Shown here: positions 848 through 29,600 of the stretch, piece after piece
How positions within the stretch are numbered: the stretch's first letter is position 1
How the letters are laid out: each line of letters opens with the position of its first letter
DNA from: Lytechinus pictus
Taxonomy: Eukaryota
Assembly: GCF_037042905.1 (NCBI RefSeq)
Contig: NC_087247.1
Location: 38,378,001-38,442,000, forward strand
Direction of reading: 5' to 3'
Length of the DNA: 64,000 nt
Notes under the pieces: generated by a model
Database searches by the model: none
What the model saw: the letters and a program-made list of their open reading frames with translations, nothing else
Told to the model about the DNA's origin: nothing
Program-made: the position numbers and the translations under genes

Positions 848-878
<31 letters not shown>

Positions 879-5780: not shown

Positions 5781-5824
<44 letters not shown>

Positions 5825-5825
5825 T
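5426..5825. repeat. (AGT)n microsatellite spanning the assembly gap
   Basis: AGT runs on both sides of the N block. Confidence 0.9.
5466..5703. other. Assembly gap (238 N)
   Basis: Run of N. Confidence 1.
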
Positions 5826-6064
5826 AATTATTGCATCACTATCGCTGCTCAGAGGTGCGTTGCTGCGAATGAAGTTTTTTTTAATCAAAACATAATTCAT
5901 TGCAATGTGGTATATTTTCTGGAGGATTTGAAAAAGAAAATAGATGACAAGAGTTTGGTTCCAGAAAAAAATGGATTAGAAATAATAACAATAATAACAA
6001 TGGATTCTTGTAAAGCGTAAACGTCTGCCAGGCATGACGCTCATGGCGCTATGTACAATCATAC

Positions 6065-7125
6065 CAATACATCTTAATGTTAATAAAAGCATTTGCATGT
6101 TATTTGGGACTGGGACAATGCTATCTAAATGTAATACTTTAAATGTAACTTTATCTGGTAAACGTATTGATCAACGAAATACTGTTAAATATATGGGAAT
6201 GTACCTTGATCCAAAGTTGAAATGGAATATACATATTGACGAAATGTGCACTAAAATTAGTAAGGTAGTCAGTTTTCTGGCCCGTCTTAGACATTTTATA
6301 TCAGAATCCAATCTTAAGATAGTTTACAATTCTATTATCCTTCCACTTTTTGATTATGCAGATATTGTTTATGATTCGGCAAGCAAAAAATACACTGACC
6401 GTTTGCAAAAATCACAAAATAAGACCGGACGTCTCATTTTAAAAATAAATCCGTTTCAAACAATGATATTCATATAAAATTAGGATGGCAGTCTCTCAAA
6501 TCAAGGCGTAAATCACATTTAAACATAATGGTATACAAATCCCTTCATAACTTAGCCCCACCTTATTTAGAAGAGTCTTTCCAATATTGTAATTATTCGT
6601 ATTCTCTCCGATCGCAAGGAAATATTAAAATTCCCAAACCCAAGAGTAAATGCTGTCGAAGAACGTTTTTATATAGAGGATCACGAGAATATAATGATCT
6701 ACCATCTACAATAAAATTATCAAATAGCCTATTTACTTTTTATAAAAATCTAAATCAGATAATTCAGTCTTGCCCTGACCTTTAAAAGAAATACTAGCGA
6801 CAAGTGGGTGGGTGGGGGGGGGGGTCGCGTTAGGGTATATGTGTATTCTCTTGCATTGTTTTTCATTATTGTTTAGCTCAATTATTTCTAATGTATAATT
6901 CTATTTTATATCATGTACAGTAACTGTTATGTCATGTTATGTACAGTAACTGTTGTTACATATTCTCTGGACCCCAGGGAAGAACAGTTTTGTTATATTA
7001 ACAAAGCTGAGTGGGTTTATCCAGCCATCTCACTATACTTTTGATTTTATTATGTATACATACATTTACCTTGTATTGTTTTTTTAACATTGTGATATGG
7101 AAAATAAATACCAATACCAATAAGG
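6065..7125 (+). mobile_element. 5'-truncated L2/CR1-group LINE: C-terminus of RT ORF2, frameshifted, plus 3' UTR
   Basis: LNVNKS..VKYMGMYLDPKLKWNIHID..LKIVYNSIILPLFDYADIVY..LQK.QN..RLIL; LGWQSL..RR; MVYKSLHNLAPPYL; YNDLPSTIK; ends in aataaa(tacca)n. Confidence 0.88.
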
Positions 7126-7817
7126 AAATAAATAAAATGTTACATATTCATATAAATCACATTAAAAAGTAGATATATTAATATCAATATTACAACACAT
7201 GATACGGGAATATCCAATGAATGTAAGTTGAATTCGCCATAAAAATAAATTATGAGTTGAAGTCACTCAATCCTAAATAAAAAAAAAAGCTACAGTTATT
7301 GAAAGTTTATTCAATAGAATTTTTATCATCTAAATGTATGTTGTTAACATTGTATCAGAAAAAGTTTCACGATATTTAATTTCTTTCTCATTCGCTTGGG
7401 GTGTTCATTCTGCGAACTTTTCTTGTATGATAATCTGAATAAAGGTTACACACAAAAAAACTCGTCACGTGGAAGTAGTAAAATTATACAGACACGTTTT
7501 GGGAAATGAATGATTTGTATAGGCAGGCTATATTTTCAGACATCTTTGTCAATGGTTATTTTTGTAAGCTCCGCTTGTTCTTTTATAATACAACATTATA
7601 CATGTTTAAACACAACATTTCGTTTGATATATCACTTATTCATTTCTTGTGTTGGAAAAATGTTCTATTAATATTTGTGTACATCTTGCTCAAATACTGA
7701 AGGGGAATGATTGATAAGGTGTATCATAGATAGCATTCTAAATGTCTCACAAATGTTCCTTTAATCCAGCTACTTTTGGAAGTTATTGATTCAGAAGCCT
7801 GATGTTCGAGACCTGCT

Positions 7818-7849
7818 TCACATCTTTCTGACAATAATTTTCATGTTGT
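7818..7849 (-). CDS. Candidate short terminal coding exon of the lectin-kringle gene (DNMKIIVRKM*)
   Basis: Strong acceptor tgtttttcag| with the correct phase, an early TGA, an AT-rich tail and a minus-strand AATAAA near 7306-7311. No homology support. Confidence 0.35.
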
Positions 7850-8517
7850 CTGAAAAACACTAAATGATGTCTCATTTGTACATGTTTGTAACTGTCAAAT
7901 TACTCCTTTATATAGGAAACATGTATATCCTATAGTGTCAATTTATTCAATGTGTATTAAAAGAGCAGTACAGAGTAATATTTTTGCTCATGGTGCCAAT
8001 AAAAAAGGCGATCCCCGGACTTTCATGCGTCTATATTAGACCACTCGACCGCCGTGCCTCAACACACTCACACACAAACACGCACACCCTAGCTAGTACA
8101 CACCCACTCATTGTACAGGGGCGGCGCCGCGATAATTTGAAAGGGGGACAAGGAGACATAAACATGCTAAATGTCACATCATTATTTTTCTTTGTTAACA
8201 AAAGCAGGGGCAATTTAACGTTATGCAATAATTCATACCTCTCATTTTTATACTCCTCTTCCTTCTTTCTTCTCGGTTTTTTTCTTTGTTCTCTACTATT
8301 TCTCTTACTATTCTAAAATTGCCCCTGTCCCACCCCTGGACGTCACTCTGCATGCCTATAAACATCCTCTCACAAACTGTACTTCCCACCCTTTACTAAT
8401 ATACACCTCCTCTCTCATCATCATTCACGCACACATTATGTACTCTCTCTAACACACCCACAATACCCACATCACTCACCCACACACGCAATCATGAATT
8501 ACTACGTGCGATCATAC

Positions 8518-8694
8518 CTCTTGAAAGCAGACCGGCGATGTGCGTCATTTCGCCTTCACTATGTATGGTAGCAAGTTTAGCATCCAGCAAGTCGCAACTG
8601 GCTCGAGCCTTAGTCCATGAGACAAAGTCTCGCTGTACCAAGTAGCAATGAGAGCCGTAGCCTTCCCAATCCGTTGGACACAAAGATCCGGGAG
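8518..8694 (-). CDS. CTLD6, first-half exon
   Basis: [34 protein letters not shown]; no WIGL or WND exons found downstream. Confidence 0.85.
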
Positions 8695-11600
8695 CTGCAA
8701 TGTATATATTAAGACCCATGGAATACAAATGTCGTTCCCTGGATAATTTGAGGGTTTAGTTATCAAACAAGTTATTAAAAAATAAAATCAGACATGCAAA
8801 AACACGTAATTTCAGCTTCGATATATATATATATGCATCGGAAAGTTTGTGGCATCCTCAGAGCGAAAAAAAATACGCTGTAGAGTAACACAGAATTAAT
8901 GTGTAAATTATCTATTAATTATCCATTCTATGGTGAAGAAATAAGTCTCAAACCATACTATGCGGATAATAAGATACCTGAAGAAAACAACTCAAACTTA
9001 ATCATTTAAAAATAGGGCTTCCCCGGATAGACACGACACGGACAATTAAAAAGCAGCATATAATTACCTAGGGTTGTTGGTGCGACAGAAGAGCCAATGA
9101 CATTCTTGCCTGTGTACAAATGAAAAATCATACATTTTTTAAAAATGAAACCAAGAAAGCAGCATGGTTAAAATTACAATATTTACTTCTATTTGTAGGT
9201 TTGGTGATAGATTTTGGAAATGAGGCATTGGTCGCAATAAGCCTGTATTTCATTGTTTCCATGTTTACCAAGGTAAGGAGAGAACAGCAACATTAGGAGG
9301 GTGTGTGTGACAGGATAAATCATATTAACGTAAAATGCATGAGAGTGTGTGCGTGTGGTGTGTGTGTGAGTGGATGAATGTTTGCGTAAAATAGTATACA
9401 ATACAATTCATCGAGGATATTAGTAAAAATTTATCACACGAAGTACCCTTGGAACAGTTCTAAAACTATTACGAAGGTACCAGTAGTGAGTAACTATTTT
9501 CAAGTCCGACCAAAATGATGTATATTAAGTTTTCTATGAAGATAATGAAGTCGATCCTTGTTAATTGATAATCAATCCTCGTTTCAAAACCATGACCGGT
9601 CACTAGTAACCGTCATCAGCAAATTTGCGTGTATGCTAAAATAAATGACTCGTCATGTGACATATTTCTTCTAATCATTTAATCATATTAGTGTGGGTAT
9701 GAAGTAGGTCAAAGTCGAATCGACTTCATTCTATTTGCTCAATGATTTATATCGCATTTGACAGTTTGATAAAATATTATAATGGATATTCAAAATCTTA
9801 CTTCTTTTCTTGCAGATGTAAGGAAACGTAAGATCACACTTTTCGTCGGACCACATTCCGTTTCCTCTTGCCATATACACACATTCTTCAATCCCCTGAA
9901 GGTTATCTGGTTGACCTAGTTTAAAAAAATGACAACAGTAAACATAATTTAATAAAATAAATTTCATATTTTAGTTTGCAACTCGTCGTTATCAATGCAA
10001 CGTTGTAAACACGATAGTACAATGAAAGTATTTCCAACAAACTCTTTCTTACCTTCTAGTCATATTTGTGTAATCATGGTAATAGGCCTGTTACTCATCG
10101 TTTTTACTTCTTGAAACTATTACTTTCTTTATATAGATTATTATAAATAACGTGTAAAAATAAATTTGTCATTATATCAGACAATAACTGATTCATATTT
10201 CCCAATTTTCCCAATTAAAAAAATACTTTATAAAAAATCGAATTCACAATGATAGAGAAAACGGATCCTGTAATTACACCGAATATTTTCAAGGTAAGAA
10301 TATGAAACATGGGCCAATAAGATTTAGACCAAATGAAGACGGTTCTTCTAGAAATGGTATTATGTGATTGTAGACCAATCATAAACCTGTTTCCCCCAAT
10401 GTTTTGTAAAAATGGCAATCATTTATTTAGTGACGATGAAGGTACCTGGTTGCCAATTTAAGTAAGAGAAAGGACTTGCATCTGTCCATTCCCAGCCTGC
10501 CTCCTGAAATCGATCATTTGCTCCTATCCAGAAACCTTCTACTGGTGATAATGAGATCATTCCTATATTAAAAAAGATATTGAGTCATTTATGGATTACT
10601 TCATAGAATATCAGATTATTGATATACATTATTTAATTTGATACACTTGTACTGATTATTGATGATAAGGGTAAAATATAACAATGATGATAAAGTCACG
10701 ATGATATCGCGAAATAAAACAACGACGATGATAACAATTATGATAATATTAGAAATGTGGCCACAGCACAAGATAATCGTTAGACTAACCGACTATAAGA
10801 TTCGACTCCGCCTCGGATAAGATACTGAGGAGATTGGCATCTTCACCCTCACACGCTTGTTGTGCTTCATCGAAACTTAGCGTTGAATCCTGTTCTATCT
10901 TATAACACCATTCCTCAGATGGGTCAGCTCTCCATCCCTCGCCCCCACAAGCTTCTGCATCGTTTCAGGGAAAAATAAATATGAGAGTTAAATGCGTTTA
11001 GGTGATACGGTGGAAACGATTTAAAGTAAAATGGTATTTGAGTGCAACTATTGAATAAATTGATCAATGATTTGCTCCTAACGCATATATTATTCCACAG
11101 AATTGAGGAGGGCAATTATCAAACTGTGTGGATCCGAAATGGGTGTAAGAAAATTCTGTTTGCGGGGAAAAGGATTACATACGAAATATTGTCCTCTTTT
11201 GACAAACATTAATAAGGGCTACGGTTGAAAGAAAATGGCCGAGGGATGATGGGATGTCGGATATTTAATGAATAAAAAACAAATGACAAGCGATGGTAGT
11301 TATTGTTACTTTGGCTGCGTATAATTTGCGTACAGTGACAATTAAAAATCATTCGGGGACCACTTGTTTTAACATTAATGTATGCATCAATTTGCAAAGC
11401 ACAAGTCTATATTTTATGCTTCTCTCCACCTAGAATAAGTGGTAAGCTGGAATGTTCCCCTGAGAGTGGAGAATGTACATACATTTTATGAGGGGAAGCA
11501 CATTTCGAATTCAGTAACAGGGAACGTAATAATAATGCACTAACCATATTCATAAATAACAATATCACTATATTTTCATATGGATATCGATTGATATGCA

Positions 11601-14600
11601 TATATTCGAATGCTTATTAAACAACATAATTCATGAGTGGTGTATTATCTTCTGTTGGATCCCAGGAGATGGTTTACATCATAAGAAACATGTCTTACCT
11701 TGTACATTACACTGAGGGATGTCACATAACTCTCTCATGTACCCCTGTTCATTGTGAGCCGCTTTATACATACAGAATGGAGCATCCGCGATGAATACAG
11801 AAGGATTACGGCAGTAATTCTCATCCAAACCTTCCAGTATAAGATATAGAAGATCACAACATTAATTCAATGCTGCCAAGCACCAGCTTTTAGTCAGGAT
11901 TTGACGCCCTTGTGGCGTTTAGGTTAACATGCGTATATAGTCTATCAGTCAGACTGGAATCGCATATCACATTATCATTACCAAAAGAGGTTATATAACT
12001 CCACCCATTGTTAAAAAAAAAAAAATCATTATATTACATTTTATTTTCCCGACAATGCCCAGCCAGAACATGCAAGACAGATGTTCTGTGATGAAATAGC
12101 GATATTGGCTGAACCCCAGAGAGCACTCTGGCAAGCATTGCCAAATACTTTTAACCGAGTCTGGTGGCTTTAAATTGTAATTGACTCACCAAGAAATCGT
12201 AAGACAGAGAATGGTTGATATCTGAAATTGACATGAAATTATGAACTGAAACGGAGTCTTCATAAATGCCGCTAAGACACTTTCTCTATCATGGATCGAG
12301 CTTGTTACTTTGATGCAACAGAGCCGAGGTGTTGGACTTTATGAACAGAGATCACTGGGAACGTAAATCATGAAGTGAAAAAATCATTTCTTTTTATCAG
12401 CTTTTGAAAAGGTGTCCTAAAAGTGAGCATTTCAGCGATAATCTACAAACTTTCCAGCTCATATGCAGATAAAGATAATGGTTGTTGTACTCTTTAATAC
12501 AGATATTTAGTTCAAAAAGCTAAACCCAGATCGACGATGATAACAGGACAATAACGATTACAATCAGTCTCAAATAATGTGTATACTCGTATAAGTTTTA
12601 GCATGGAAATGGTCAATCATAAAAAAAAATCGTACAGGATAATGAGGATTTCGAGATTGATAATACTTTAACTTGTATTTCCTCTCTCACCTGCATTCGG
12701 ATAATTATCAGGAATCCAATAAGTGTCCTTCCATTCCACACAGATATGACCAGATGCTGTGGTGCGAGCTGGACCGCGGTAAGTAGTGCCTCGGACCCTC
12801 GGATCGTAGCATCCTACATCTTCAGCTGTTTGGTACAGAATCAGCGACATGAATAAAATGGAATGAATCAGCATTTTTAAATTGCTTTGACAAATATTTC
12901 AAGCAATAAAAACTACATAGAGCATGTAGGTGTAAATCTCTGGAAATCTGCCGCACTAGTTCATGTTCTTTTAATATAATTTCGTCAGATTCAAACTCTG
13001 TAATCACCTATTCCTAAATATCATAACCAATCAACACACCAATTAAATACGATCATTCGTTTCTTGAACCAATTAAGGAATAATACTAGCTTATGTATCA
13101 ACTTTTTCCATTTATTGATCTGTATAAACAATTTTGCTCATGTTTTTGTAGTCCATAAAAAGTGTCATGCTGTATTTTGCTCAAGATTACTTTCTATACA
13201 CCGCATTGAATTTTAATTATACATTACATTCAGATCTTTAGATGATGACACATTTGTGATGACATTCCGGCATTCTCGAATATGGTTAATCAGGCTTAGC
13301 ATTCAATGTTTTTTGTATTCCAGCACGAATGGAAGTATAATTTTGATGATAGACTTCTGATATCCCACAATCACATTACGTCCAGTCAGACGAAGCACAC
13401 TTACAACTGCATTCTATGACTAAATATTGTGACCAATCAGGACGAAGCATACTTACAACTGCATTCTAGCACTAAATATTGTGACCAATCAGGACGAAGC
13501 ATACTTACAGCTGCATTCTAGCACTAAATAGTGTGACCAATCAGGACTAAGCATACCTGTATTGTAGTACCGACATTGTGACCAATACGGAGAAATCTAC
13601 AACTGTATGCTGGCACCAGACATTGTGACCAATCAGGACGAAGCATACTTACAATTGCAGTCTGGCGCAAAATAGCGTGTTCAATCAGGAAGAGGCATAC
13701 ACCTGTACTTACTGCGTTTTAGTACCAAACACTGTGACCAATCAGGACGAAGTATACTCACGATTGCATTCTGGTACTGAACAATATGACCAGTCTGTTT
13801 GGTTGTGTATCGGATCCCAAAAGTAACACCATGGACCCATCGCTCCATTCGGATTTCGGCAATAATTCTCCTCCAGCCCTAAGAAGTGGTAAAAAATAAA
13901 AACCTCTGTACAGAATCCTCCATCTCATTTCTAAACAACTAGCTTCATATTCTGATTTTAGTATTTGTACATTATTCGTCTTGGCCAAGATGCCAGTCGA
14001 TTAAGTGAAAATTAATTACTCGATATGATTTGTCTTTGCAGATTTCGATTAAATTATTCGTAGAGTATATAGGGCCTTAATCATGCAAGTGTCACATGTG
14101 AAATATTTTTATTTTGTTAATGTCTTGTTCGGGGATCTTTTAAGTAGTTGTCCATTTAAATAATATCGAGAATAGGTGCCCATTCTATTGCTCTCTGTCA
14201 GTTTGTATTCTTCAAACAAAGTTGTGAACAATTTGATAACGGTAAAAAAAAATTGGTAGACCGACGCTGTTTAACATTTCTACTAGATAAACTTCTATTC
14301 TTTCTTTGATATATTTTTATTTCAATTTCACTATAGGCCTTTATCATGTGAATCTTGGGGATCTACCACCGTCAAAGATTACCAAAAATGGTGCTTCTGT
14401 TTTCCTGCTCACCATATGTTTGGTTTCTCTCATAATAGTCTTGTTCTGGGTCGTAGCCTAATTCCACATCTTTACTGTTCTTAGCGCTCAAGAGACAACG
14501 AGATCGGTCACTCCCGCCACTCGCCGTGTGGTAATTAAACGATTTGCAGAAGAAATCAGCTCGATGAAGACACTCATGGGCACACTCAGAGAGGCTGATA

Positions 14601-17600
14601 TCGCTGATACTTGGTGCCACTGGAAGGATGGATTTGAGCGGCTGCATCGTGAATTCGCTCAATGGCACTAAGACAAAGAAAAAAGGGTATTTTGCTATCC
14701 ATACCTTGGAAGAGGGTATATAGTTATTACAAACCTTATTTGTCCCTCTACAACCCTCAAAATGACCAAGATATGTAATAGGTAAGGCTCTGTACAGCTA
14801 AAGTGCATACACAGTTGAAAATTTCTCTGGGTTGAATTCTTAGTTGAACAATATATCATAGGCTCGAATTGATTTTAACTTGAGCTTTTTTGACAAACCC
14901 CCTACTAAATTCAAAGGTAAATCGTTCCACTCTAATATCACTCTTAGTGATATCCAGATTATACAATTAAAACTAAAAGAACTACAACATTAACTGGAAC
15001 GTGTGCACTTTGATTGTGTTCAGACATGACGGAATTGGAGATATCTTCATTGTAATGTAATAAAAAATTATCACCATTGGTAATACATTGTCAAATATTG
15101 CATACTTTATAATGATATTTTGGATGTGTAACAATTATAATAATCGATACTTTCGATTTCCGCTCAAAGATGGGTCTCCCAAAGTGTATATCATTCATGT
15201 GCAAAGAGAATGATTCTGGCAAATCAATATGCTTACCTGGGTAAAATTCATCGATGAAGTTGACCCAGTCAGAGCAGGTCCGTCCTAAAGAAATGTAATT
15301 TGCATGTCCGCGATACGACATCCCTTTCCCGACATAGCATCCAACTTCAACTGGGTAAGAGTAATATAATTTATTTGTCTTTAATTGCTATTCATTCATT
15401 ATATGTTAGCAACTGTGTGATTTATCATTGATCATTTCAATTAGCATTGTTTCATGATGCTTTTAATTATTTGAGTGAATGGGCTTTATGGCTTACTATA
15501 TTTTGATTCATTCTTTCAATAAGATCGACACTACATTGACATATAGTAATTTACAAAAAATATATAATCAATACTTACTGGTGCAATGTGGGACAAGACA
15601 TGGTTCCTGTACAAGGCCTTGGTTATCGTCTCTTACGTAACACCATGGCTCGTCGTCCTGGCTTGGATTGCGACAGTAATTATGATCCAATCCTGTCATT
15701 ATTATATGAAATTTGAATAGTTGTTGATATCATACTGACCTAATAGAGACATTTTAAGGAGAGTGCCATTAAACGGATATGTATCTTACTGATCAAATAA
15801 TGTGAGCGTGAAGCGCGAAAGTTTTTGATATTCAGACCTAAAAAGGGACATTATAAGTAAATGTTTGTTATCATGATACGTACCTGTCTTGCTTTAACAA
15901 ACAATACGAGCGCGGACATTTTAAGGACTATACTTTAGGAATCAATCAAGAGTATACATATATCTCACCATAGTCATCTAATGCGAGTGTCAAGCGATTG
16001 CTGATTTTGTTAGAATTACATCTAATCACACTTGTAGTCATTGTAATCATGATTAACATACGCATCTCACTAATCAAATATTGCGAGCGCGAAGCGCGAG
16101 CTTAAAATTTAGGAAATTCAGACCTGAAGAGGGGCATTTTAAGGCTTGTTTGCAGGAAATCACGAATATCATACGTATTTCACTAATCAAATGATGCAAG
16201 CGCTATGCGCGAGCTAAAATTTTTGTTGACTCCAAAACCATGAAAACAGGGATATTTTAAAAACTATTTTTAAGGAATTCATTAAGAGTATACATATCTC
16301 ACCATAGTCATCTAATGCGAGTGCCAAGAGCTTACTGATTTTGTTAGATTTGCATCTATAAACACAAGTCATGAAGCACTTTTTGTAGTCATTGTAATCA
16401 TGGTTATCATACGCATCTCAATAATCAAATTTTGCGAGCGCGAGCTGAAAATTTAAGAAATTTAGACCTGAAGAGGGGAATTCTAAGGCTTTGATACTGA
16501 TATTCTTCGTCACCAAAGGGGCGAGTACAGGTCTACTCTAGACTGACTCTAAAAGCAGACATACCAGCATTAGGATACGTGGTAGGGTTATATGGCCGAC
16601 TTGTCGCTTCTTCCCACTTTACGCACGTCTGTCCATTCTCTCCTTCATTCGCTGATCCTCTATAGTTGGCACCGTTTCCCTCATAGCAACCAGTAGCTGT
16701 GTGGGGGTAAGCGAAATCGACTCGTGCATGATTATTGTATCAATAATACTGATGTATCATGTATAATCTTCGATACACTGTAATGCAACAGTGAGAATAA
16801 TGACGTTGCTAATTAGGCCCAAGTTCTCGTTTTCAGATTTCTTCCTCCCAGATTCAATAAATAATTAAATAGGAGAAATATGTATCAACAAACAACACAT
16901 ATAATGGTTATGAATTTCTCCGAAGATGGAGTAAAAATCTAAAGCAGTTTTGGCAGTTTTACAGAAGTGCTATAAACAATATGTTCAGCATTCAAACGCC
17001 TAACAGCACAAACACTGAAACAATCAACAATTTTAGGACTTATGCATGCACTTCGATAATTGTTAACTGGATAATATTATTACAAAAATAAAAGAAAATA
17101 AAAATAAATCTTATATCGGCTATTTATCATACCACCTCATTTACACCACTTTCCCCACCTGTATACGATAATTCCTTTCTGCATTTACCATGATTTAAAA
17201 AAACAACTGCTTTCACAACCATCCTGTTTAAAAATACACATATCTGTAATGAACAAAATACTTACTATTGCACTTGGGGATTCCACAATAGGAGTATGCG
17301 TACCCTTCAGCTTTCTTGTTATAGTAACACCATGGACCATTTCCGGATCCAGCTGGGTTTCGACAGTAATTACCCTCCAGACCTATTCATTTAATTATTG
17401 AATTTCAGAATACTTTGATCTGAATGATAAATATGATCATTGTATTTATTATTGCTTTTTGTAAAGACGTTTGATTAAAATAACGTAAAAAATAATAATT
17501 TGTCAATGATTATTCAGATGGGTTTACATTTAGGGTAATGATATAGGATAACGATGTAGATACTTGTATATTTTCTTATAAGTCACCAGGCACCACGGTC

Positions 17601-20600
17601 ATCCTATTCTCTTTTAAGAACATGAAATGATTAATGATGTGAAACGGGAGGAGCTCACATGAAGTTCTTGTTATTTTCTAATCTGTAATGAAATTTTATA
17701 AAATGAGACATCCGCGAGCGTTGAAGCGAAACAAAAACTACGTTACTATGTTTTCTTTTCAGAGATGCATCGTCTAATATCTTAATGATATTGATAATTG
17801 ATAATGCAAGAGTGAATGTATACCCCTCAAATTAATATGAAACATAGAACGAAGGGGACGATATAACGTCGAGCAAACGAAAAGACAATACCTTCTTCTG
17901 GAAAGGATCGAGGGTTGAAGTAAGCCGAATCGTCGAGGGAAGCCCAAGGAAGACAGGTACTACCGTTTTCTGTCTTGTCATACTTTCCTCGGTACACGTA
18001 CCCATCACCTTCGTAACAGTCAACAGGAGCTGGGGTGGAAGATAAATTATGTATGAAATCCATTATGAGTAATGGTTTTATAAATAAGAAGGAACACTGA
18101 TCCCTATTGAAAAGTAAATATTGCAGTTTTAAAGCAATTAGTAATGATTTTGTTTCTTGGAAAAATATTGTGGTATTATTGTTGTCGATATTAGCACAAA
18201 AAAATTATCAGTTTGGTAAATAAATAAGATACACAAACAACATTTTAAAACCTGGGTAAGGACGAAAAAAGATGATGTGAGATTGCCAATTCTTAAATTT
18301 GCAACTTACCATTGCATTGAGGTACATCACAATCCTGGAAGCCAAACTCAATATAACACCAAGGCTTGGCAGCATTGTTTGGATTCCGACAGTAGTTCTC
18401 CGTTAAATCTAAAAATCAAAATTGCAGTTTGTAAAAAAAAAAAAAATATGAAAGAATGAGCTATATACAGCAATGTATGATTAAGAAGAGAAAATTTGAT
18501 AATAGGGAAAATTAGGGGGGAAAGCGTAGCATGCTTATTGTAGCGGCAGACCTAGAAAATCATCACTATGAATATTCGAATACATTCCAATGTATTCACT
18601 GACAACACGATAATGTTTTCCCTGTCCAGTCTTACACGATTTTGCAAAGTACAGTCAAGTTTGCTTGGTAAGTTGGTATTGAGTAAAATATTTTAAGTTT
18701 AGTAAAATGTTTTGGGCTAAATCTTATCAAGCTTCTCGAAAAGAAGGTGTTGCTCTTTTTCCTTCAGGGAAATTGGGGCTTGGATGTCTATTCTAAACTC
18801 TGAATATACTGTACCTTTATCGGGGTAGTCTATTGGATTATACTCTCGGTTCGCATCTTCCCAATTATAACATAGGTTTCCATCTACAGTCACTATTGCA
18901 TTCCCCTTATATTGCTGAAATGGTTCATAGCATCCAACATCAGCTGTATAAATTAAACAAAACACATTATCATGCAATAGAACAATTTATTTGGACATTT
19001 AATGTCACTGCCCATTTATCATTAGGAACCATCATGATTGATTGATTTAATTCGCCGTGTGTGATTTAACTAATGCAAATATAAGATATAAAGTATCAAA
19101 ATACCTCGACGAGATGTCTCATATCCAGAAGGGTCTTTACCTACGTCACTGAAGATGAACTTTCTCCCGAATGCTCGATTTTCACCAGAACCATTAAAAG
19201 GATGCTCCGGGCTGAAAATATTTATATCTCAATACATAGAGTAAAATTCACAGAGCAAAATGCTGAAAATTTGATCAAAATCGGATAACAAATAACGAAG
19301 TTGTTGAATTTTAAAGATTTGCTTACTTTCGGTTAAATAATTCTAGGCATGTCTTCATGAATATTCATTAGATGGGCTGATGATGTCATATCCCCGCTTA
19401 TTCTTTTGTATTTTACTATATGGAATTAGGTTTATTCGAAAATTTTCTACTAAGAACTTAAACAATTAGATTGATATCTGATTAAGTGCATTAGTTATTT
19501 CTTGCTGCAACTTATTTCATAATAATGGAGACACATCATTTACACATCTCTTGCTGCAACTTATCTCATAATAATGGAGACACATCATTTACACATTTAA
19601 ACAATCATGATTTCATGTAAAAACATAAGAAAAAGGAAAATGGGGATGTGACATCATCAGCCCACCTAATGAATATTCATAATGACATGCCAAGATCTGT
19701 TTCACCGGAATAAGGCAAATATTTATAATTCAATAACTTCGTTATTTGTTATCCGATTTTGAGGAAATTTTGAGCATTTTGCTTTGTGAATTTTACTCTA
19801 TTTATTCAGATATAAATATTTTCAGCCCGGAGCATCCCTTTAAGACATGAACGCAATTATTCTTCACCACAATTATTAGATGTAAACATGGTAAATACGT
19901 GGAAAACTCTCTCGAATGCTCCTTCTTCACGAGAACATTCGAACGTAAATTTCATTATCTGAATATGATCACACAGCAACAAACACACCCTCACACTGAC
20001 TCACCTTTGCGCACACCCACGTGCATTCACACACACACACCCTCACCCATAGATTCACGCACACGGAGGTTGTATGCGATTTAATTAGCCGACTGTATAG
20101 CGTGTGGAATATATAACATTTAGTATTATTACACATATATTAAATTTCCATTTAACATCTTCACATTGGGTACAATTACAGGATTGTCAAATTCTTTTTA
20201 TGCTGCTGTAGACAAATCAATATTGAATGTATAGAGGGTAAGGGTAAAATGTACTTACGTGGATTTGTGGGAGGAGGCGGGGTCGACTCATCTGTCAAGG
20301 AATGCAAAGAAGAGTTAACAAAATTATACGACAAACTTGTATTATGCTGTGTTAAAAAAATCAATCATCACAATAATTCATATCAACATTACAGAATCTA
20401 TCAACGAAGGCCCTAAACAAAAACGATAATTTTCATTTCAAATGTTTTGTAAAAGACATTAAAAAAAAAGAAGGGAATAATGTTTCTGTTTCTGGTAACT
20501 CCCGTAGGAACCATGCAGGACAGCGTTTCGCTGGTAAACGCCAAGCTGGTACATAACCAATTTTCTAAGAAATATGTGTTATCAAGTCGCAGAGTTTGAT

Positions 20601-23600
20601 AAAATAGCTTTGCAATAATTCTTTAACAACTTACTATTTTATGTCAAAATGTTCAATTACCTGCTTTTTTCTTGCAAATAGAAGCATATTTCCGATTACA
20701 TGAAACGTCATTCCACACTCCTGATGGGGTGGTATATGGCCCTCGTACATGAACACAATCTTCGTTGCTACCGGCGTTATTTGGTTCACCAATGTCCCAG
20801 TTGTGGTAATCAAACTGCAGGAGTAAAAATGATAATTTATTTATTTAAATGTTTTCATTCCTGTTTCTTAAACTAAATATTACCAATACAATATCGCTAA
20901 TAGTTAAATTTCTTATGGTAGACGGAAATTCATAAAAAATATTCTCTCCAACTAATTTCATACACTGTAAACAAATATTGGGTAAAAATTTAACCAGTAC
21001 GAGGGTAATAATGTGTCCAACCAATTTAGGGCAGTAGTTTACCCGATGTGGGAAGTATATTGTCAAGTAAAGTTAAAAAATAAGCAGCAATGACTTTAGA
21101 ATGGAAATAATTTTTAGAATGGGCAAAATTTTTATCAAATTGGATAAATAAAAATGCCCAATGTTGGTTGGACACATTATTACCCTCATATATCATTTTT
21201 ACCCAATATTTTTTTAGAGTGTAGGAGATAAATCTAGAAAACGGAATGATATTAAAAGGAAGCATTGTTTAATGCTTAGTCTCACCACTGCTTAGTTAGA
21301 ACACTAAGAAGAATTGCACAGAAATTATATCAATATATATAATATTTTTTCTGAAAAAATGAATCGAGGCTTGGTTAATAGGGAATTATAATCTCGACCT
21401 GGAATGATTTGATATCTATTTCAAACATCTTTTTCCTCAGGATAATCACATCGTTCTATTAATCATGACTTATTATCATCCGTTTTTTTCCATTCAGGAT
21501 AGCATAGAAAAGTTTTAGCTCAGTTTTACATGTTGTATATGCTGTGGTGTTGTTGCTTATTTCAGGCATTTTATAAAATTCATCATCATCTGCATAAGCT
21601 GGAAGAGAGGTGGAATGGTAAAAAAAATACTTTTTTAAGAAGTGTGAACCTGGGAAACGTTTCAGCAATGTTTTTGTCCAACAAGACAACTTTCCTTGAT
21701 TTGGATTGGCTGTAAAGCGCTGTTACGATGGCAACTGTCGGATAAAACGGGACTTGCCAGATAAAACGTCCGACAAGTCATTTCATGAAACGCTCCAATG
21801 ATCTCCCAAATTGTAAAGATTTACAAAGTAGTTTATGGAATTATGAGGGACATACCTGAGTTCCGTCAGTCCATTGGAAATCGTTTATTCCAGCACCTTT
21901 TCTTTCAAGTCCAACATAGTAGTCATTTGCTTGAAGATGTACTACAAAAAAATATTTAACAATAAAGTAAAAACATACCTATTATGATTATGATGGTAGA
22001 GAAGTACATGTAGTTTATTGCGATATCATATAGTTTTATATCAAAATATATAATAGCTACATAATAGAGCATACAGTATGGAATATAGTTTAATAGTCAA
22101 TGATATGGGCATACATGTACATGAAATAAATATCAGTGGAAATGTCTATTACTCAATATTAATATACGGCTTGCTCCAAAACTTCTTGAAATAGAAATCA
22201 AAATGTGTATATCAGTAGCTCCAACACTTCTTAAAATAAAAATTAAAATGTGTATATCAGTCGCTCCAGACCGCTCCAAAACTTCTTAGAATAAAAAAAA
22301 ACAGTTGTCCTGCTTCTAAAAATAACTTTACAAAAATTGTTTCAGGGACTGGAAAAGTTAATTAGGTTATTAGACCTTTGACTTTCCTGCACATGTTAAC
22401 AATTTGAGAGACTGTTTGCAAACTTAACTATAATAAACGACAAAATGTATGTTTATTTTATGAGAAATTACGCCGAATCAGAATAACTAACTCCAAATTC
22501 AAAAAAACAATGCAACAGTTGTTTAAAATACTGGCCTATCAAGCCTATAGCTTTAGCTTTGTTTTTGTTTTTTAAAAGGCAAACCAGAATTTTTATTTCG
22601 TAAGCATTTTGGTCCGAAAAATAGATAAAATCACATATTCGATCCAATTACTTACATTCTATGAATGACATTTCTTCTGTCGTATGGATGCTTGCCAGTT
22701 TGCCTCCCTTATCATTACAGTTTTGTTGTGCATCAGTATAAGTTACTCCCGTTTCTTCCATAAAGTAGCAGTGGTCATTGTAGATATACCAGTCAGCTGG
22801 ACAGTAGCCCGTTGCTGGAATGAAATGTTATGGTCAAAGTGTTAAGTGTCTAATAACATAGAATATATAAGAAATATATCATGATGATAGAATGATCAAA
22901 ATCGTCTGTAATAAAAAGAATTAATATATTCTGTCATTGTTGATTTTACACAGAAATCTGTAATATCACGTCAATATAATTATGTACTCACGTCGATCAG
23001 GATCCACTGGAGTAATAGGTGCTCCTGGAAAGAAATAATGATATCATTAAACAATAGTTAAATTTAAGAGCGTTATTAAAATTAACTGATGATTATAAAG
23101 TTTTCATAAAACAACTGTTCCTTAAACATCACTTCTTATTCTACAATATATATACATGTAGCTCTATATTTTGCTCCTTTTAAATCCCTCCTCTCTTGTC
23201 CATGTTCATCATGTTCATCATGTTTATTTTAAAACATGTTTATATACCATGGTTATCGTGTCCGCTGCAGTCTTTATTTTTCTCCATTATACATGTTGCC
23301 TTGTCTTTCTCCTACATAATTTGCTAACCCTTTTTTCTTTTATTTTCACTGTCATTGTTATGATAGAACGACACTATAAATCTCTTAGTATCCAAGAAAC
23401 ATGATGAAAATGTGTAATCATGTAATAGAGTAATTGAAATTTGTTCAGTTCTAAAATTCGCGAAACATATATTGATGTATTTGATCACGGGAATATCCAA
23501 ACTTTCTCCAGACTGTATAAGCGATAGTTTACTTCGTTCTTGGGGAGGTTTTACTTTCAAAATGTTTATTGTTTGATGCATGAACTGAACATTACCTTCT

Positions 23601-26600
23601 CGAATCTTACAGGTGTAGTCAAAGAGATTAAAACAATCACCATAGTCCCATTGCCCAACTGAAGAACCTGTGGAGAAAAATAATCATATTCGCATTTTAA
23701 AAATAAAGTACACGTATTACAGAGACATAATCCGCCATCTTGCAAGCTCAATATGAACCGTATACGTACTCCGTAAATCAATTATTATGTTGATACCTCT
23801 GGGGTGGTATTCTGAGGTCATTTTATCTTTAAAATATCTTATTTTATCTCTTAATATGAAATTGGATATTGCTTCAAAAATAGGTGTTCTTATAATAATA
23901 ATAATAATAATAAACAGTTCTTGTATAGCGCATATCACGATTATGAATAATGTCTCTATGCGCTTCCAAAGGACTTGGATATTATTACCCCAGCTGTAGC
24001 TTGGCAGCCGTAATTACTAAGATTACAGCGCACACGCATTTCAAGGAATAAATTCCTGCCAGGTACCCATTCACCTCACCTGGGTTGAGTGCAGCACAAT
24101 GTGGATAAATTTCTTGCCGAAGGAAATTACGCCATGGCTGGGATTCGAACCCACAACCCTCTGTTTAAAAGTCCGGAGACTAATCCACTGGGCCACAACG
24201 CTCCACATAGAGATAAAATGAAGATGAAATGGTTCTCAGACCAATTCGAAGAGATTTAAAGGTATTTTATCTCACTGATTTTAACGGAGATAAAATAGTT
24301 TATCTTATCTGCATAAAATGGATCTCAGAATACAGACCATTATTACATTGGTTCGTATACGGGTATATGTTTCACATGTATTTGGAGAGTATGTCTAATA
24401 GTCAAATTTTTATACATGATTTTGCTGTCTTGGCTTTCTTTAGGTGAGACTGCATTAGATCAATCGCAAGGCACGCATTGGAATTTGTGAACAATTTTAC
24501 GGGTTTTTTTTTTTCAATTGAAGTAGCCCTAAAAACGGTATCAAAATCATTGAATAATTGTATTGTAAAATATAAAATGATTAAATATAATAAACTGTCA
24601 CAGTGTATGTGCTTTACAATCGAAAGGAAATGAAAATCGTAAAAAGGGCCAAGGTAAAAAAAATCCTACCTGAGACAAAACATTACAAAGGTAAAACCAT
24701 TTTTTTTTTACATGGTGATATCATTTTAAAAGATTTATACGTTTACAGTCCCTGCATGCTGTCATTATCTTCGTTAAATAAGTTTATTAGTGGCTATCTA
24801 TAATTTCAGTCAGATATGGAGAAACAAGCTTTGGTACCGGTATAAATAGATCCACATTGTTGTTCGCCTTCTCTGTTAGCTGGTTTGTTACCAGCAGGCC
24901 AGTTCTGGTATGCTGAATCGTCGTAAGCTGTACCGTCGGTCCATTTCATTTCTCCGTCTTTCAACGTATCTAAAACAAAACGCAACTAGAATTTTAGTTT
25001 AGACGATATCATACAGAAAGCATTCTTGAAGGAGAGCATTGGAATTCATTTAGTTAAAATAAGATGGTGTTGTGTGATTCGTTTAAAAAAGATTGACAAT
25101 GAAGGTATCGAATAATTTGCTAACATAAAAATTGTTTTCAAACTAAAAAAAATAATAATAATGGGCGCTGTTTTGCTTTGTTCAGTTTTGTTCTTCTGTT
25201 CATTTTGAAGTTTGCTCTTAATACAAGTGGGAAAATTTCAAAAATACTGCATGAAAAGAAAAACGATTTATATCAGATAAGAGATATAAAACTTCTGATA
25301 AAAAATGTGATAGTTTTGGAGTTCATAGGGAGAGAGAGAACAACTAACTTCCAAGTATTTGCAAGTGATTTTTTTATACAACGAGCCACCCTCCCAAGTA
25401 TACCTATATTATAGCTGACGATGTTTGATGTTGCTAGATAAATCTTACTCACCAGAGATGCCAAGCCAGATACTCGGGATTCCATTTTGCCACAGGACAG
25501 GAAGCTGTTCATTGATGAATTCTTGCTCTTTTTCACTGTACAAATTGATGCAATAATGGGTAAATATCAGGGATGTTTCCGTTTTATCCTGTGGCAATTT
25601 ATTCATTTGTTTGATATCTATTTATGTTTTGATTTATTCATTCATAATTCAAACATTTACTAAATTATTTATTCATTTCTTTGTTTATTCATTTATTCAC
25701 TCATTCATTTATTTATTTACTTTTTTTTCTTTCTATATCACGAATTATTCATATGTATATTTATTATTCTTTCGACCATATTTGCCCCTTCCATAGTTTA
25801 TTTCACGATTGTGATGTACTTTGAGGATGGGATAATAGTTACGTTTTAGATTGCATGGAGTGTATGTTTATTGTAGATTTTGCAAATTAAGGAGCAATTG
25901 TCGCAAAATCAATTGTGTCAAAATATCCCGGTGTCTTTTCAGTCATCGTAAAATGTATGGGGAAAAAAGAAGATTTGTTTGAAAGTGCAATACATGTCGT
26001 TAAGGGCTTACTTTTTGATAGTGAGCAATGTGCTTCCCTGCGCTTCACACTTATCTTTAGCATCATCCCACGTGGTAGGTGAGGAGGATACCAGTTGATA
26101 GCAGTAACCATCATGTATCCTCCAACCTGGATAACACATACCTGGTAGCATGCAAAATACATAAATAAATAAGGCTTTGGTTCATCAAGGCAAATATTTG
26201 AAAAGAACTTAGGCCTATTCTATTGTCGAGATGGACATGAAAATTTAGACGATGGACAGTTTCACATCTGACATGTCCGACGCCTTTTTACCTGCTCTTG
26301 GTAGCGAGATCAGATCTTACTAAAAAAATTGTCCACCGTAGCAGCCGTCGAGTTTCAATGCTTAGATATTATTTAGATAGCCAGAAAACTATGTGAAAAC
26401 AATATGGATAAATGGGTCAACAATAAAAATGGAGGTGATAGAGAAGGAGAACGAGGAGCAAACTGTGGCAATGGATGGTTATAACCACACAAAGCTTATG
26501 AGGGGCCAGGCCATCTATTATATCAGTGTATAGTGTGTTAACATTGGTTCAACCTTCTAAGCTTCACACACAATGACAACGTTCCGTCGCCAGTAAGATC

Positions 26601-29600
26601 AGACGAATCAGGCATAGAGATGTCGGAAGAGGCTGTATATGAATGCAAACCTTTTTTTTAGTAATACAAATCAGAATGTTTCATAATAAAAATATGACTT
26701 TAGATATCTTCTGAATAATTGCAAAAAGAACTTTTCGACTATATACTGCATCCTATGTTACCAATGAATGACAAAGGCAATAACAGTTTGCACAGTTTCA
26801 CCAATTCTTTTTATCCCCGAGACATGATAATTAGTATTTGTTTTATACAATATGTAGCTGGATTACCATTGCTTAGTTTGGACATGGAGGGTCCATAGTT
26901 TGAAGCATGGCTTGACCGCGTCTGACGGTGGAATCACGCAACCCAAACTTTTGTGACAACATGCCACTTTATTTGAGAAGGACCGTGTCCACCATTTGGG
27001 GAAAACATACCCCATGAACAGACTAAAGGTCGAGACTATTACCCGAACATCTTGAAAAAAAAAAAGAACTGGAAAACAGTATATTAAATATAAATAATGT
27101 TACGCAATTGCCGTTTTACCAGTTGGTTTCTCGCAAATGAATTTCCTTCCCCAAAAACAGTCTGCTGTCGACCAGTTACCAGTTGACGTGCTCTGATAGA
27201 TCACCTGAGTGCATTCCTCATCTGAGCTAGACAGCCGGTGAATATAGGAAATTCGGCAGAAAAGGGAGAATGAGAAATGGAAAGAGAGAAGGGTAAGAAA
27301 GGAGGGGGTGAGGGTGGCCAGGAAGGGATATAGGTGGATAGATAGATGAATAGATAGATAGATAGATGAGAGGGAGTAAGGGATATAGGTGGATAGATAG
27401 ATGAATAGATAGATAGATGAGAGGGAGTAAGGGACATAGTAGTAAGAGCAGGGAGAGTATAAGAAATAAGATGTTATAAAAAGAGCGATAAAGATAAATG
27501 TAAGAATGGTGAATAATGAAGTGGAAATAACAATAATAACAATGGCGTTATTTGTTAATACACACCCCTATGTTAAATGTACATCGTTTCTAATTTGGTA
27601 ATACTAAAGGTGGGGCCTAACCCCCCCCCCCAAAAAAAAAAAAAAATAATAATGATACTCATATTGATAAGATTAACTACAAAATAATATGGAAGAATAA
27701 AACAATGCTGTCCAACCTCTAGAAGGCAATATCAGTATATAATATCATCAATAATTATTACTTATGAACTAAGAACACAATGTTTTTTTATAAAGATCAA
27801 AGAAAAATGAACTTCTATTAGTTCTTCGTGAATTTCAAATTTCGAATTAATATTCTTTGGGTTTTTTTCCTTTTCTCTTCTCTTTTTTTTCAGATAGAAG
27901 TTACATCTAGGTCACTTACTCCATGCTTGGTTCATTAGTTCCCCAGTGTTCATAACCCGTTCCATGTCCAGATGTCCACCTGAAATCATCCAGTCCACCC
28001 TTTCAGAAAGAACAAATAGTCAAAACAATGTGTTAAAATAGTCAAAATAACTAACTATTTTAATACAACGTGACCACAATGTAGACACTGCGTGCGTGAT
28101 GCGTATACCACTCAATAATGACCAAGCCCCCCCCCCCTTCCTCTATCTTTACGCCAGTGATACCTACCACACTTTTGTATCCAATCCAAAAGGAACCCCT
28201 TGCTTCCTGTACCAACTCTGATAGAAACATCTGTTCTTCTTCATCGACTACATCCATGAGGTTACCATCATAACGTGTACAGTATTCCTGGGTAAGGAGC
28301 AATGAGAAGCAAGCGAGGTATTATTAACTTTATAACAATTATTAGGGTATATTGTATGTCGGACATGTACATACTACAAATAAGCTATTATTTGAGAAAT
28401 TTCGATGCAAATTACAATGTTGAAGAAACCATAGTAATTATAAGCAAAAATTACAATACCAGTTAAAGGACATATTTAATGGGGCTCTGGAAGTCTCCAA
28501 AATTACTCGACACAAAAAACTCAATGGACAAGGTACCGCGCAACATAACGATGACATACGAGGACAATATATCTTTTGTCTTTCCATACACCATTTAGGT
28601 TGTGCTTCTTTGTATCCTCATGTGTCTCTTGTTTTGTCTCAAAAAGTAATTAGATAAAAATGCAGCAAATATGTCTCACTTTGTCAAAGACGGTCTTCCA
28701 TGGGGACAATAAGATACATTTATACACCAATGGACAAAACAAGGGTGGGCAAAGTCCATTGAAGTCATCCATCTTTTTCACGTCGAAAAAAAAATATTCC
28801 AATTGTTCCATTTGAAGTATCCCTGTAACTCTAACTAGCTTAGCCGGAGTATAGTACGTGCGCTATATAAATCGTATATTATTCACATTTATTAATATTT
28901 TCTTAATTGCGTTATTGAGCTTCAAACTCGTGGTTTATCAAATCAGGGAACAACCAATCGTCTTCGCTAACCAGTAAAATTAGCACACTTGTACCAATGA
29001 TACAAATCAGCATGAACATACACAAGATCAACACCAAAGATAAAATGACTTAAGAAAATATTGAGACGGTGTAACGATTGCGTTTAATTTTTGAAGAAAA
29101 AAGAAGGTTTGAGAACTACTCAGATTTCACAGTGTAAAATGAATCGTAATACTACATGTTTGCTGACCTGAGCGTCGTCAAAAGTCATCCAGTTTGTTGA
29201 AGTATAATAACAATTCTGGAATTGCTCTGTCCATCCATTTGACTCGTCACAGCGAACTGGTTGAGCTGTACTCAAAAAGAAGGGCATTTATTCTGGATTT
29301 TGGTTAACATTTTGTTATATTTCAGAACAGCACTGACTAATATAAGTAAGAATATTTATTGATTATTATTTTAATTTTGGCAGTATATATACATTATATC
29401 AAACTATTATAATAGCTAAACAAAGGATTCTGGCTATACTTTGAAAGAAGAATGACATTGTGCCCGGAAACATTACTCGAGAGTGTTAGTAAGAAGGAAC
29501 TTATGGAACTTATACTAGATTGACATTTTGAGAGAAATCATGGTGTTTTTTATTTGGTTTAAACCTCTATCCTGTCGAATTTATAAAAAAAAATCAACGT

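What the first reader, a model, noticed from the sequence alone, without database searches (positions are those of the whole stretch)
13762..15350. A whole PAN/apple domain is inserted inside kringle 4 as a skippable symmetric exon
Seen: each of the other four kringles has adjacent a and b half-exons. In kringle 4 the order is K4a (15237-15350), PAN exon (14413-14667), K4b (13762-13878). I found no NYCRNP exon between K4a and PAN and no first-half exon between PAN and K4b. The PAN exon is 255 nt and phase 1-1. Skipping it gives an intact kringle (..[16 protein letters not shown]..); including it places 85 aa in the loop between kringle Cys2 and Cys3. Established: in plasminogen, HGF and MSP the PAN domain precedes the kringles in tandem, and exon shuffling normally inserts modules between domains. 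Inference: this is a domain-in-domain insertion through the kringle's internal phase-1 intron, possibly a splice switch between a plain kringle and a PAN-bearing kringle. I know of no described example, but I could not search.
Basis: partly seen in the sequence, partly recalled or inferred. Interest (0 to 1): 0.9.

Follow-up and report, generated by a model that had tools for sequence, protein, structure and literature searches.

The report
PAN domain nested inside a kringle
In a sea urchin lectin-receptor gene, one exon places a whole PAN domain in the middle of a kringle domain; the layout is real and shared by sea urchins and sea cucumbers, but nothing shows it is switched on and off by splicing.

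Summary
On the minus strand, K4a (15350-15237), a 255-nt PAN exon (14667-14413) and K4b (13878-13762) lie in that order. All three are phase 1-1 with good splice sites. The two short introns contain no gaps and no other half-kringle exon.

The window is Lytechinus pictus, from a gene named "macrophage mannose receptor 1-like". The same K4a-PAN-K4b exon order is in the genomic DNA of a Strongylocentrotus relative, Diadema antillarum and the sea cucumber Apostichopus japonicus. Protein models of five species include the exon. An intronless 8.9-kb Holothuria mRNA contig carries K4a, PAN and K4b in one reading frame. A crinoid has the PAN and K4b exons with the same boundaries, but I found no K4a there.

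Between two urchins, only the three exons align. The PAN exon is under purifying selection (omega about 0.2). Joined K4a+K4b still scores as a normal kringle.

So this is an ancient, translated domain-in-domain insertion, most simply made by a 1-1 exon landing in the kringle's internal phase-1 intron. I found no skipped isoform and no conserved flanking intron sequence, so the "splice switch" has no support. AlphaFold modelled the PAN confidently but not the kringle, so closure of the kringle around the insert is not shown.

The parts
15237..15350 (-). Kringle 4 first-half exon (K4a). 114 nt, phase 1-1, carries kringle Cys1 and Cys2 and ends ..DEFYP.
   Evidence: for sequence and splice sites. 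Pfam Kringle profile positions 1-27. 86% amino-acid identity to L001.
14668..15236 (-). Intron between K4a and the PAN exon. 569 nt, no N, no kringle-like ORF.
   Evidence: Not alignable to the strongylocentrotid or Diadema intron.
14413..14667 (-). PAN exon. 255 nt, phase 1-1, encodes 85 aa with four core Cys.
   Evidence: PAN_1 at 37.7 bits. The Cys align with the plasminogen N-terminal domain. AlphaFold pLDDT 85-96. Foldseek match to the HGF N domain 3hmr, TMt 0.71. Omega about 0.2.
13879..14412 (-). Intron between the PAN exon and K4b. 534 nt, no N, no kringle-like ORF.
13762..13878 (-). Kringle 4 second-half exon (K4b). 117 nt, phase 1-1, carries NYCRNP and Cys3 to Cys6.
   Evidence: Pfam Kringle at 41.1 bits on positions 46-79. 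92% amino-acid identity to L001.
18815..18943 (-). K1a exon (boundaries read from the splice sites).
18310..18408 (-). K1b exon.
17892..18029 (-). K2a exon.
17266..17382 (-). K2b exon.
16565..16696 (-). K3a exon.
15579..15692 (-). K3b exon.
12691..12825 (-). K5a exon.
11699..11830 (-). K5b exon.
8495..35863 (-). Extent of the host gene as far as the L. pictus model XP_063953055.1 maps. In order: signal-peptide exon at 35863-35792, C-type lectin exons, K1 to K5, then more C-type lectin exons.
   Evidence: tblastn of P0147 on the window. Names and accessions.

Best explanation
The 255-nt exon is an ordinary, translated coding exon. As far as the evidence goes it is included constitutively. The host gene is an echinoderm multi-C-type-lectin receptor, which in sea cucumbers is a type I membrane protein with 14 lectin domains and 5 kringles. 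The exon encodes a four-cysteine PAN module of the HGF/plasminogen type. It sits in the loop between Cys2 and Cys3 of kringle 4, exactly at the position of the intron that splits every kringle of this gene.

The most likely origin (inferred) is classical exon shuffling. A class 1-1 PAN exon landed in the phase-1 intron inside K4. Because the phases matched, the frame was kept, and the insertion was fixed before sea urchins and sea cucumbers diverged, probably before crinoids split off.

The most likely way it works (inferred, not shown) is as follows. The PAN folds on its own two disulfides with its two ends close together, so the two kringle halves can still pair their three disulfides around it. 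K4 would then act as a scaffold that permanently displays a PAN binding module next to the kringle. This would be a nested version of the tandem PAN-kringle pair of HGF and plasminogen.
For: Shown:
- Exon coordinates, phases and splice sites.
- PAN_1 and Kringle assignments.
- The same K4a-PAN-K4b exon order in L001, a Strongylocentrotus relative; in Diadema antillarum L002; and in Apostichopus japonicus L005.
- The same PAN and K4b exon boundaries and phases in the crinoid L003.
- Protein models of L. pictus, S. purpuratus, D. setosum, A. japonicus and H. leucospilota all read K4a|PAN|K4b.
- The intronless Logan contig L004 (8944 nt, 2627-aa ORF) is 99.7% identical to the H. leucospilota protein, whose gene spans 149 kb. 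It has the three parts contiguous in one frame.
- Between L. pictus and L001 only the three exons align; the introns do not.
- For the PAN exon, dN is 0.33 and dS 1.65, so omega is about 0.2. Omega is 0.04 for K4a and 0.02 for K4b.
- Joined K4a+K4b scores 62-66 bits on an HMM built from 324 non-echinoderm kringles. That is within the 63-88 bit range of K1, K2, K3 and K5.
- The PAN is modelled at pLDDT 85-96 and matches the HGF N domain and plasminogen.
Against: - Closure of the kringle around the insert is not demonstrated. In both AlphaFold runs K4a has pLDDT below 50, and K4b reaches only about 50-58.
- The crinoid assembly has no detectable K4a between K3b and the PAN exon, so a PAN followed by a half-kringle can apparently persist.
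- The PAN evolves about 5-10 times faster in dN than the kringle halves.
- I could not examine sea-urchin RNA-seq junctions, so 'constitutive' rests on gene models and one holothurian transcript.
- No sea star, brittle star or outgroup orthologue was obtained. The time and direction of the event are therefore inferred.
Confidence: 0.8

Rival explanations
1. The PAN exon is a cassette exon. Regulated skipping switches K4 between a plain kringle and a PAN-bearing kringle.
For: - The exon is 255 nt and symmetric 1-1, so skipping keeps the frame and restores the canonical ..P-G-LE.NYCRNP junction seen in the other kringles.
- The PAN has a higher omega (0.2) than its kringle flanks (0.02-0.04). 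Relaxed constraint of that kind is often seen in alternative exons.
Against: - No skipped product appeared in any cluster or model examined. These included two L. pictus, three S. purpuratus and three A. japonicus RefSeq proteins, plus the holothurian mRNA contig.
- The acceptor has a long pyrimidine tract and the donor is GTGAGC.
- The flanking introns are not conserved beyond about 10-20 nt, unlike typical regulated cassette exons.
- A search for short spliced fragments found nothing either way.
Confidence: 0.12
2. K4a and K4b are remnants of two different kringles that once flanked a tandem PAN (Kx-PAN-Ky). The Kx b-half exon and the Ky a-half exon were then lost. On this view the arrangement is exon loss, not insertion.
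For: - Tandem PAN-kringle and kringle-PAN orders exist in related mosaic proteins, for example P0003.
- The crinoid shows that a half-kringle exon can go missing next to this PAN.
Against: - This needs two separate deletions on either side of the PAN exon, against one insertion.
- Every species with data has exactly five kringle equivalents with the PAN at the same internal junction.
- Joined K4a+K4b scores as one normal kringle.
- Both halves are under very strong purifying selection, as expected if they form one fold.
Confidence: 0.05
3. The arrangement is an assembly or annotation artefact, or the PAN ORF is a non-coding pseudo-exon in the intron.
For: - The D. antillarum annotation breaks the gene exactly here.
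- An old S. purpuratus model (P0088) skips K4a, which shows that gene models at this locus are fragile.
Against: - Four independent genome assemblies show the same exon order (and the window).
- A spliced mRNA contig contains it.
- The ORF, the four Cys and the splice sites are kept, although synonymous sites are saturated and the introns cannot be aligned.
Confidence: 0.02

Closest known systems
The PAN-kringle pair of plasminogen, HGF (NK1) and MSP
   Same: - The same two module types occur together.
- The insert has the four-Cys PAN pattern of the plasminogen N-terminal domain.
- Its model matches the HGF N domain (3hmr, TMt 0.71). The best Foldseek hits overall are plasminogen and HGF NK1.
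- In this gene the kringles are split by an internal intron just before ..L-x-x-N-Y-C-R-N-P.
   Different: - In those proteins the PAN precedes the first kringle in tandem. Here it is nested between Cys2 and Cys3 of the fourth kringle.
- The host protein has no protease domain. It is a membrane multi-lectin receptor.
Fibronectin type II modules inserted inside the catalytic domain of MMP-2 and MMP-9
   Same: Class 1-1 modules were inserted internally into another domain by exon shuffling, and the host domain stays functional. The insertion is stated in PMC3927616. That the host stays functional is my own knowledge.
   Different: There the host is a large enzyme domain. Here the host is itself a small, triple-disulfide mobile module of about 80 residues, and the insertion used that module's own internal intron.
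Mannose receptor family (MRC1, MRC2, PLA2R1, LY75)
   Same: - The database name of the host gene is 'macrophage mannose receptor 1-like'.
- The sea cucumber orthologue has a signal peptide, 14 C-type lectin domains, one transmembrane helix and a short tail.
   Different: - Pfam found no ricin-type or fibronectin type II domain.
- Instead, five kringles sit in the middle of the lectin array. That is not a feature of the vertebrate family (own knowledge).
Other nested (discontinuous) domains, for example the split PH domain of PLC-gamma or the integrin I domain within the beta-propeller
   Same: One domain is inserted into a loop of another, with the two ends of the insert close together. This comparison rests on my own knowledge and was not tested here.
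   Different: Those are cytoplasmic or large domains. I know of no described case in which a kringle is the host, and the literature searches found none.

Membership tests
PAN/apple superfamily (Pfam PF00024 PAN_1) | Profile match above the curated cut-off | tested here: met
   37.7 bits against a cut-off of 21.4, E 1.9e-9, profile positions 17-74. The holothurian orthologue matches positions 3-74.
PAN/apple superfamily (Pfam PF00024 PAN_1) | Four core cysteines forming the two inner disulfides | tested here: met
   C-x3-C ... C ... C is invariant in all orthologues. It aligns with the four Cys of the plasminogen N-terminal domain. The bonds themselves were not observed.
PAN/apple superfamily (Pfam PF00024 PAN_1) | PAN fold (a helix packed on a beta-sheet) | tested here: met
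   AlphaFold pLDDT 85-96 over residues of about 40-125. Foldseek match to the HGF N domain 3hmr/3hms, TMt 0.71-0.72, rmsd 2.7-3.0. This is a prediction, not a solved structure.
Apple subtype (prekallikrein / factor XI) | A third, outer disulfide joining the first and last Cys of the module | tested here: not met
   The exon has only four Cys. It is the HGF/plasminogen subtype, not the apple subtype.
Kringle (Pfam PF00051), for K4 | Six cysteines and the NYCRNP core, scoring as a full kringle | tested here: met
   Cys1 and Cys2 are in K4a; Cys3 to Cys6 and NYCRNP are in K4b. Pfam places the halves on profile positions 1-27 and 46-79. The joined halves score 62-66 bits on my HMM, against 63-88 for K1, K2, K3 and K5.
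Kringle (Pfam PF00051), for K4 | A closed fold with 1-6, 2-4 and 3-5 disulfides | tested here: inconclusive
   In AlphaFold, K4a has pLDDT below 50 and K4b about 50-58, in both runs. A deeper alignment could not be built because MAFFT misaligned the a-halves onto the insert.
Class 1-1 exon-shuffled module | The module is encoded by a single exon flanked by phase-1 introns | tested here: met
   L. pictus, the strongylocentrotid L001, D. antillarum, the crinoid and A. japonicus.
Regulated cassette exon | Transcripts observed both with and without the exon | tested here: not met
   Only inclusion was seen. Raw RNA-seq could not be examined, so absence of skipping is not proven.
Regulated cassette exon | Conserved intronic sequence flanking the exon | tested here: not met
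   The alignment extends only 9 nt upstream and 20 nt downstream of the exon between L. pictus and L001.
Mannose receptor family | Type I membrane protein with tandem C-type lectin domains | tested here: met
   H. leucospilota has 14 Lectin_C stretches, a signal peptide and a hydrophobic stretch at about 2549-2573. The window itself holds only part of the L. pictus gene.
Mannose receptor family | N-terminal ricin-type cysteine-rich domain followed by a fibronectin type II domain | tested here: not met
   No such Pfam hits in P0104 or P0147.

The most novel reading that the evidence does not exclude
Kringle 4 really does fold, with its three native disulfides, around a complete PAN module. That would make it the first documented case of one small disulfide-rich mobile module being inserted inside another through the host module's own internal phase-1 intron, and then kept for roughly the whole history of crown echinoderms. 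A bolder version, which the evidence does not exclude, adds that exon skipping toggles the insert in some tissues.
Probability: 0.55. Interest if true: 0.6.

Novelty: new variant of a known kind. Interest (0 to 1): 0.45.

Why it matters
Exon-shuffling theory says that phase-compatible modules are inserted between domains, and that insertions inside a small folded module should be lost. Here a 1-1 module sits inside another 1-1 module, and the arrangement has been kept under selection across echinoderm classes.

This gives a natural test of how tolerant the kringle Cys2-Cys3 loop is. It is also a ready-made example for protein engineers who want to use kringles as display scaffolds. It warns that domain-architecture pipelines will read such a protein as 'Kringle-PAN-Kringle' and count a kringle too many. 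The gene models at this locus are indeed often broken. It does not open a major unsolved question.

Tried and rejected
- A search for short spliced protein fragments covering K4 (P0001:505-700 as its own query) returned nothing. It therefore gave no transcript evidence for or against skipping.
- Exact look-ups of P0001, P0087 and P0102 found no contig. The H. leucospilota gene is too long to fetch.
- I tried four ways to deepen the AlphaFold alignment: whole paralogous kringles, a-half fragments, shortened a-halves, and kringle-plus-half-kringle rows. In each case MAFFT put the a-halves on the PAN or on K4b, or paired K3a with K4b. Those alignments were discarded. Only orthologues, b-halves and PAN rows were used (A2).
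- An HMM-based scan for split kringles in all fetched proteins did not even recover the orthologues and was dropped.
- Two regex hits for 'long' kringles (P0032, P0089) were ordinary kringles with variant motifs.
- Five literature searches found no description of a PAN inside a kringle or of this gene.
- I considered that the TSP1 and EGF exons at 42-57 kb belong to the same gene. I rejected this because the signal-peptide exon of the lectin/kringle gene maps to 35863-35792.
Full report
**1. What is in the window**

The gene lies on the minus strand. Reading it directly gives three exons: K4a at 15350-15237 (114 nt), a PAN exon at 14667-14413 (255 nt) and K4b at 13878-13762 (117 nt). Each exon begins with two bases of a split codon and ends with one, so all three are phase 1-1.

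The acceptors have pyrimidine tracts and the donors are GTAAGC, GTGAGC and GTGAGT. Including the PAN exon reads ..DEFYP-V-PLSEF...[16 protein letters not shown]... Skipping it reads ..[15 protein letters not shown]...

Pfam assigns the middle exon to PAN_1 (37.7 bits, cut-off 21.4). It places K4a on Kringle profile positions 1-27 and K4b on positions 46-79.

A word-size-2 tblastn found exactly five first halves and five second halves of kringles in the window. Four of the five pairs are adjacent.

**2. Whose gene it is**

An exhaustive HMMER search with the 84-aa PAN peptide returned a 984-aa protein that is 100% identical over the exon. Its source name is 'macrophage mannose receptor 1-like [Lytechinus pictus]', XP_054749960.1. 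A newer model, XP_063953055.1, has 1295 aa. The newer model maps to window positions 35863 (signal-peptide exon) down to 8495.

The TSP1 and EGF exons further upstream belong to another gene.

The full-length orthologue in Holothuria leucospilota has 2627 aa. It has a signal peptide, 14 C-type lectin domains, five kringles, one PAN, a transmembrane stretch near residue 2550 and a short tail. Pfam found no ricin-type or fibronectin type II domain, so the protein resembles the mannose receptor only through its lectin array.

**3. The arrangement is shared and old**

The K4a, PAN, K4b exon order, with the same exon boundaries, is present in genomic DNA from:
- a Logan contig from a close relative of S. 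purpuratus (L001: K4a 12-122, PAN 498-746, K4b from 1381);
- Diadema antillarum (L002: K4a about 9179-9265, PAN 9758-10009, K4b 11336-11452);
- the sea cucumber Apostichopus japonicus (L005: K4a 21212-21325, PAN about 22013-22257, K4b 22663-22785).

Protein models of S. purpuratus (three), D. setosum, A. japonicus (four) and H. leucospilota all read K4a|PAN|K4b.

In the crinoid Anneissia japonica, the PAN and K4b exons are present at the same place with the same phase 1-1 boundaries. I could not find a K4a exon in the 2 kb between K3b and the PAN exon. That stretch has no N but does contain a long microsatellite.

From my own knowledge, sea urchins and sea cucumbers diverged well over 400 million years ago, and crinoids split off earlier still. 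So the PAN-K4b junction is as old as crown echinoderms, and the full nested form is at least as old as Echinozoa.

I obtained no sea star, brittle star or outgroup orthologue. The protein searches only return candidates within a set length range of the query.

**4. The exon is expressed and under selection**

One cluster member, P0156, comes from a Logan assembly. Its contig (L004, run SRR29838373) is 8944 nt long and carries an uninterrupted ORF of 2627 codons, with 104 nt upstream and about 930 nt downstream. The ORF is 99.7% identical to the H. leucospilota protein, whose gene spans 149 kb. The contig is therefore a spliced mRNA, and in it K4a, PAN and K4b are contiguous. This is direct evidence that the exon is included.

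Between L. pictus and L001, blastn aligns only the three exons. K4a and K4b each align at 83% and the PAN exon at 67%, with at most 9-20 nt of flank. The introns do not align at all.

Nei-Gojobori estimates:

| Exon | dN | dS | omega |
|---|---|---|---|
| PAN | 0.33 | 1.65 | about 0.2 |
| K4a | 0.06 | 1.37 | 0.04 |
| K4b | 0.05 | 2.49 | 0.02 |

Synonymous sites are saturated, so these ratios are rough. Even so, an 83-85 codon frame with four invariant cysteines kept open in at least six lineages is not a pseudo-exon. The PAN is clearly less constrained than the kringle halves.

**5. Is K4 still a kringle?**

By sequence, yes. On an HMM that I built from 324 non-echinoderm kringles, the joined K4a+K4b of five species scores 62-66 bits. 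The uninterrupted K1, K2, K3 and K5 of the same proteins score 63-88 bits. The very low omega of both halves points the same way.

By structure, I could not show it. With five orthologous rows, AlphaFold modelled the PAN at pLDDT 78-91 and both kringle halves below 50. With 85 rows (orthologues, kringle second halves and PAN modules; alignment checked), the PAN rose to 85-96. K4b rose to about 50-58 with the expected beta-hairpin. K4a stayed below 50.

Foldseek placed the model on plasminogen and HGF NK1. The PAN alone matched the HGF N domain (3hmr, TMt 0.71, rmsd 2.7). The K4b piece matched tPA kringle 2 over 36 columns.

I could not add first-half paralogues, because MAFFT would not open the 85-residue gap. 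The idea that the two ends of the PAN lie close together, as they must for a nested domain, rests on established knowledge: in apple domains the first and last cysteines are disulfide-bonded. It was not measured here.

**6. How it most likely arose and works**

- Shown: a single 1-1 exon lies in an intron that is itself phase 1 and that splits all five kringles at the same position.
- Inferred: a PAN exon was shuffled into that intron, and the frame was preserved because the phases match. The nearest PAN modules outside the orthologues (39% identity) are in mosaic proteins that also carry kringles, such as P0003 with PAN-PAN-kringle, LDLa, SRCR and trypsin domains. Genes of that kind are plausible donors.
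- Inferred: the PAN folds independently on its two disulfides and hangs from the Cys2-Cys3 loop of K4. This would give the receptor a fixed PAN-kringle unit, topologically different from the tandem unit of HGF NK1 and plasminogen.

**7. Rivals**

- *Splice switch.* The frame arithmetic allows it, and the faster evolution of the PAN is compatible with it. But I saw no skipped product, the splice sites are strong, and there is no conserved flanking intron sequence. I give it about 0.12.
- *Loss of two half-exons from an ancestral K-PAN-K.* This needs two deletions and is not suggested by any species seen. I give it about 0.05.
- *Artefact.* Excluded by four assemblies and one mRNA.

**8. Comparison with what is known, and novelty**

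Nested domains are a known class. Patthy's group lists fibronectin type II modules inserted internally in MMP-2 as an exon-shuffling event (PMC3927616). I found no paper that mentions a PAN inside a kringle, or this gene at all. The proteins have nevertheless been in RefSeq for years under a generic name.

I therefore rate it a new variant of a known kind: a real and neat case for people who study module evolution, but not a new principle. I score the finding 0.45.

Noticed in passing
window 13382-13772: A 52-bp minisatellite (7.7 copies, 73% matches) starts inside the last codons of K4b. Its unit is the exon's 3' end (..[11 protein letters not shown]) plus the splice donor and about 20 nt of intron. 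As a result, several donor-like GTAAGT/GTGAGT copies follow the real donor.
   Followed up: partly
window 42552-56912, minus strand: Exons for at least three TSP1 repeats (56655-56912, 48201-48479, 47518-47712), about seven EGF-like repeats (46881 down to 42552) and a 249-aa cysteine-free, Thr/Pro-rich ORF (49065-49811). They lie upstream of the signal-peptide exon of the lectin/kringle gene, so they should belong to a separate neighbouring gene.
   Followed up: no
window 1-8494: The L. pictus RefSeq models end by reading into the intron after 8495 (..[10 protein letters not shown]). The many further lectin exons and the transmembrane exon seen in S. purpuratus and sea cucumber orthologues did not map below 8495. 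This stretch holds the N gap (5466-5703) and an ORF that looks like a non-LTR retrotransposon reverse-transcriptase fragment, judged by eye and not searched (about 5998-6782, plus strand).
   Followed up: partly
L002 about 9150-9170 (Diadema antillarum): K4a has a 1-nt frame shift in a run of G, relative to the intact D. setosum protein (..GCYVGRGSTYRG..). The D. antillarum annotation splits the gene into two models here, and the second model starts at a Met inside the end of the PAN exon. This is probably a homopolymer assembly error.
   Followed up: partly
L003 18341-20335 (Anneissia japonica): No K4a exon was detected between K3b and the PAN exon. The interval starts with about 430 nt of microsatellite. 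The gene model fills it with two non-kringle exons (19038-19118, 19951-20085). This is either real loss of a half-kringle or an assembly or annotation problem.
   Followed up: partly
protein P0004 (1185 aa): Among the best PAN matches is a protein with Pro/Ala-rich linkers and five tandem PAN repeats (39% identity to the urchin PAN, with the same DxYxR tail). Its composition looks bacterial. Its source is unknown.
   Followed up: no
window 1983-2285 and 23988-24235: Similar translated motifs (..EIYP.C.AL.PG.VNGY..) appear in the ORF lists at these two places, one of them inside an intron of the lectin gene. This suggests a dispersed repeat family.
   Followed up: no
protein P0088 (old S. purpuratus model): This model omits K2b and K4a, so its PAN appears to follow K3 directly. 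It shows how the nested layout misleads gene predictors.
   Followed up: yes
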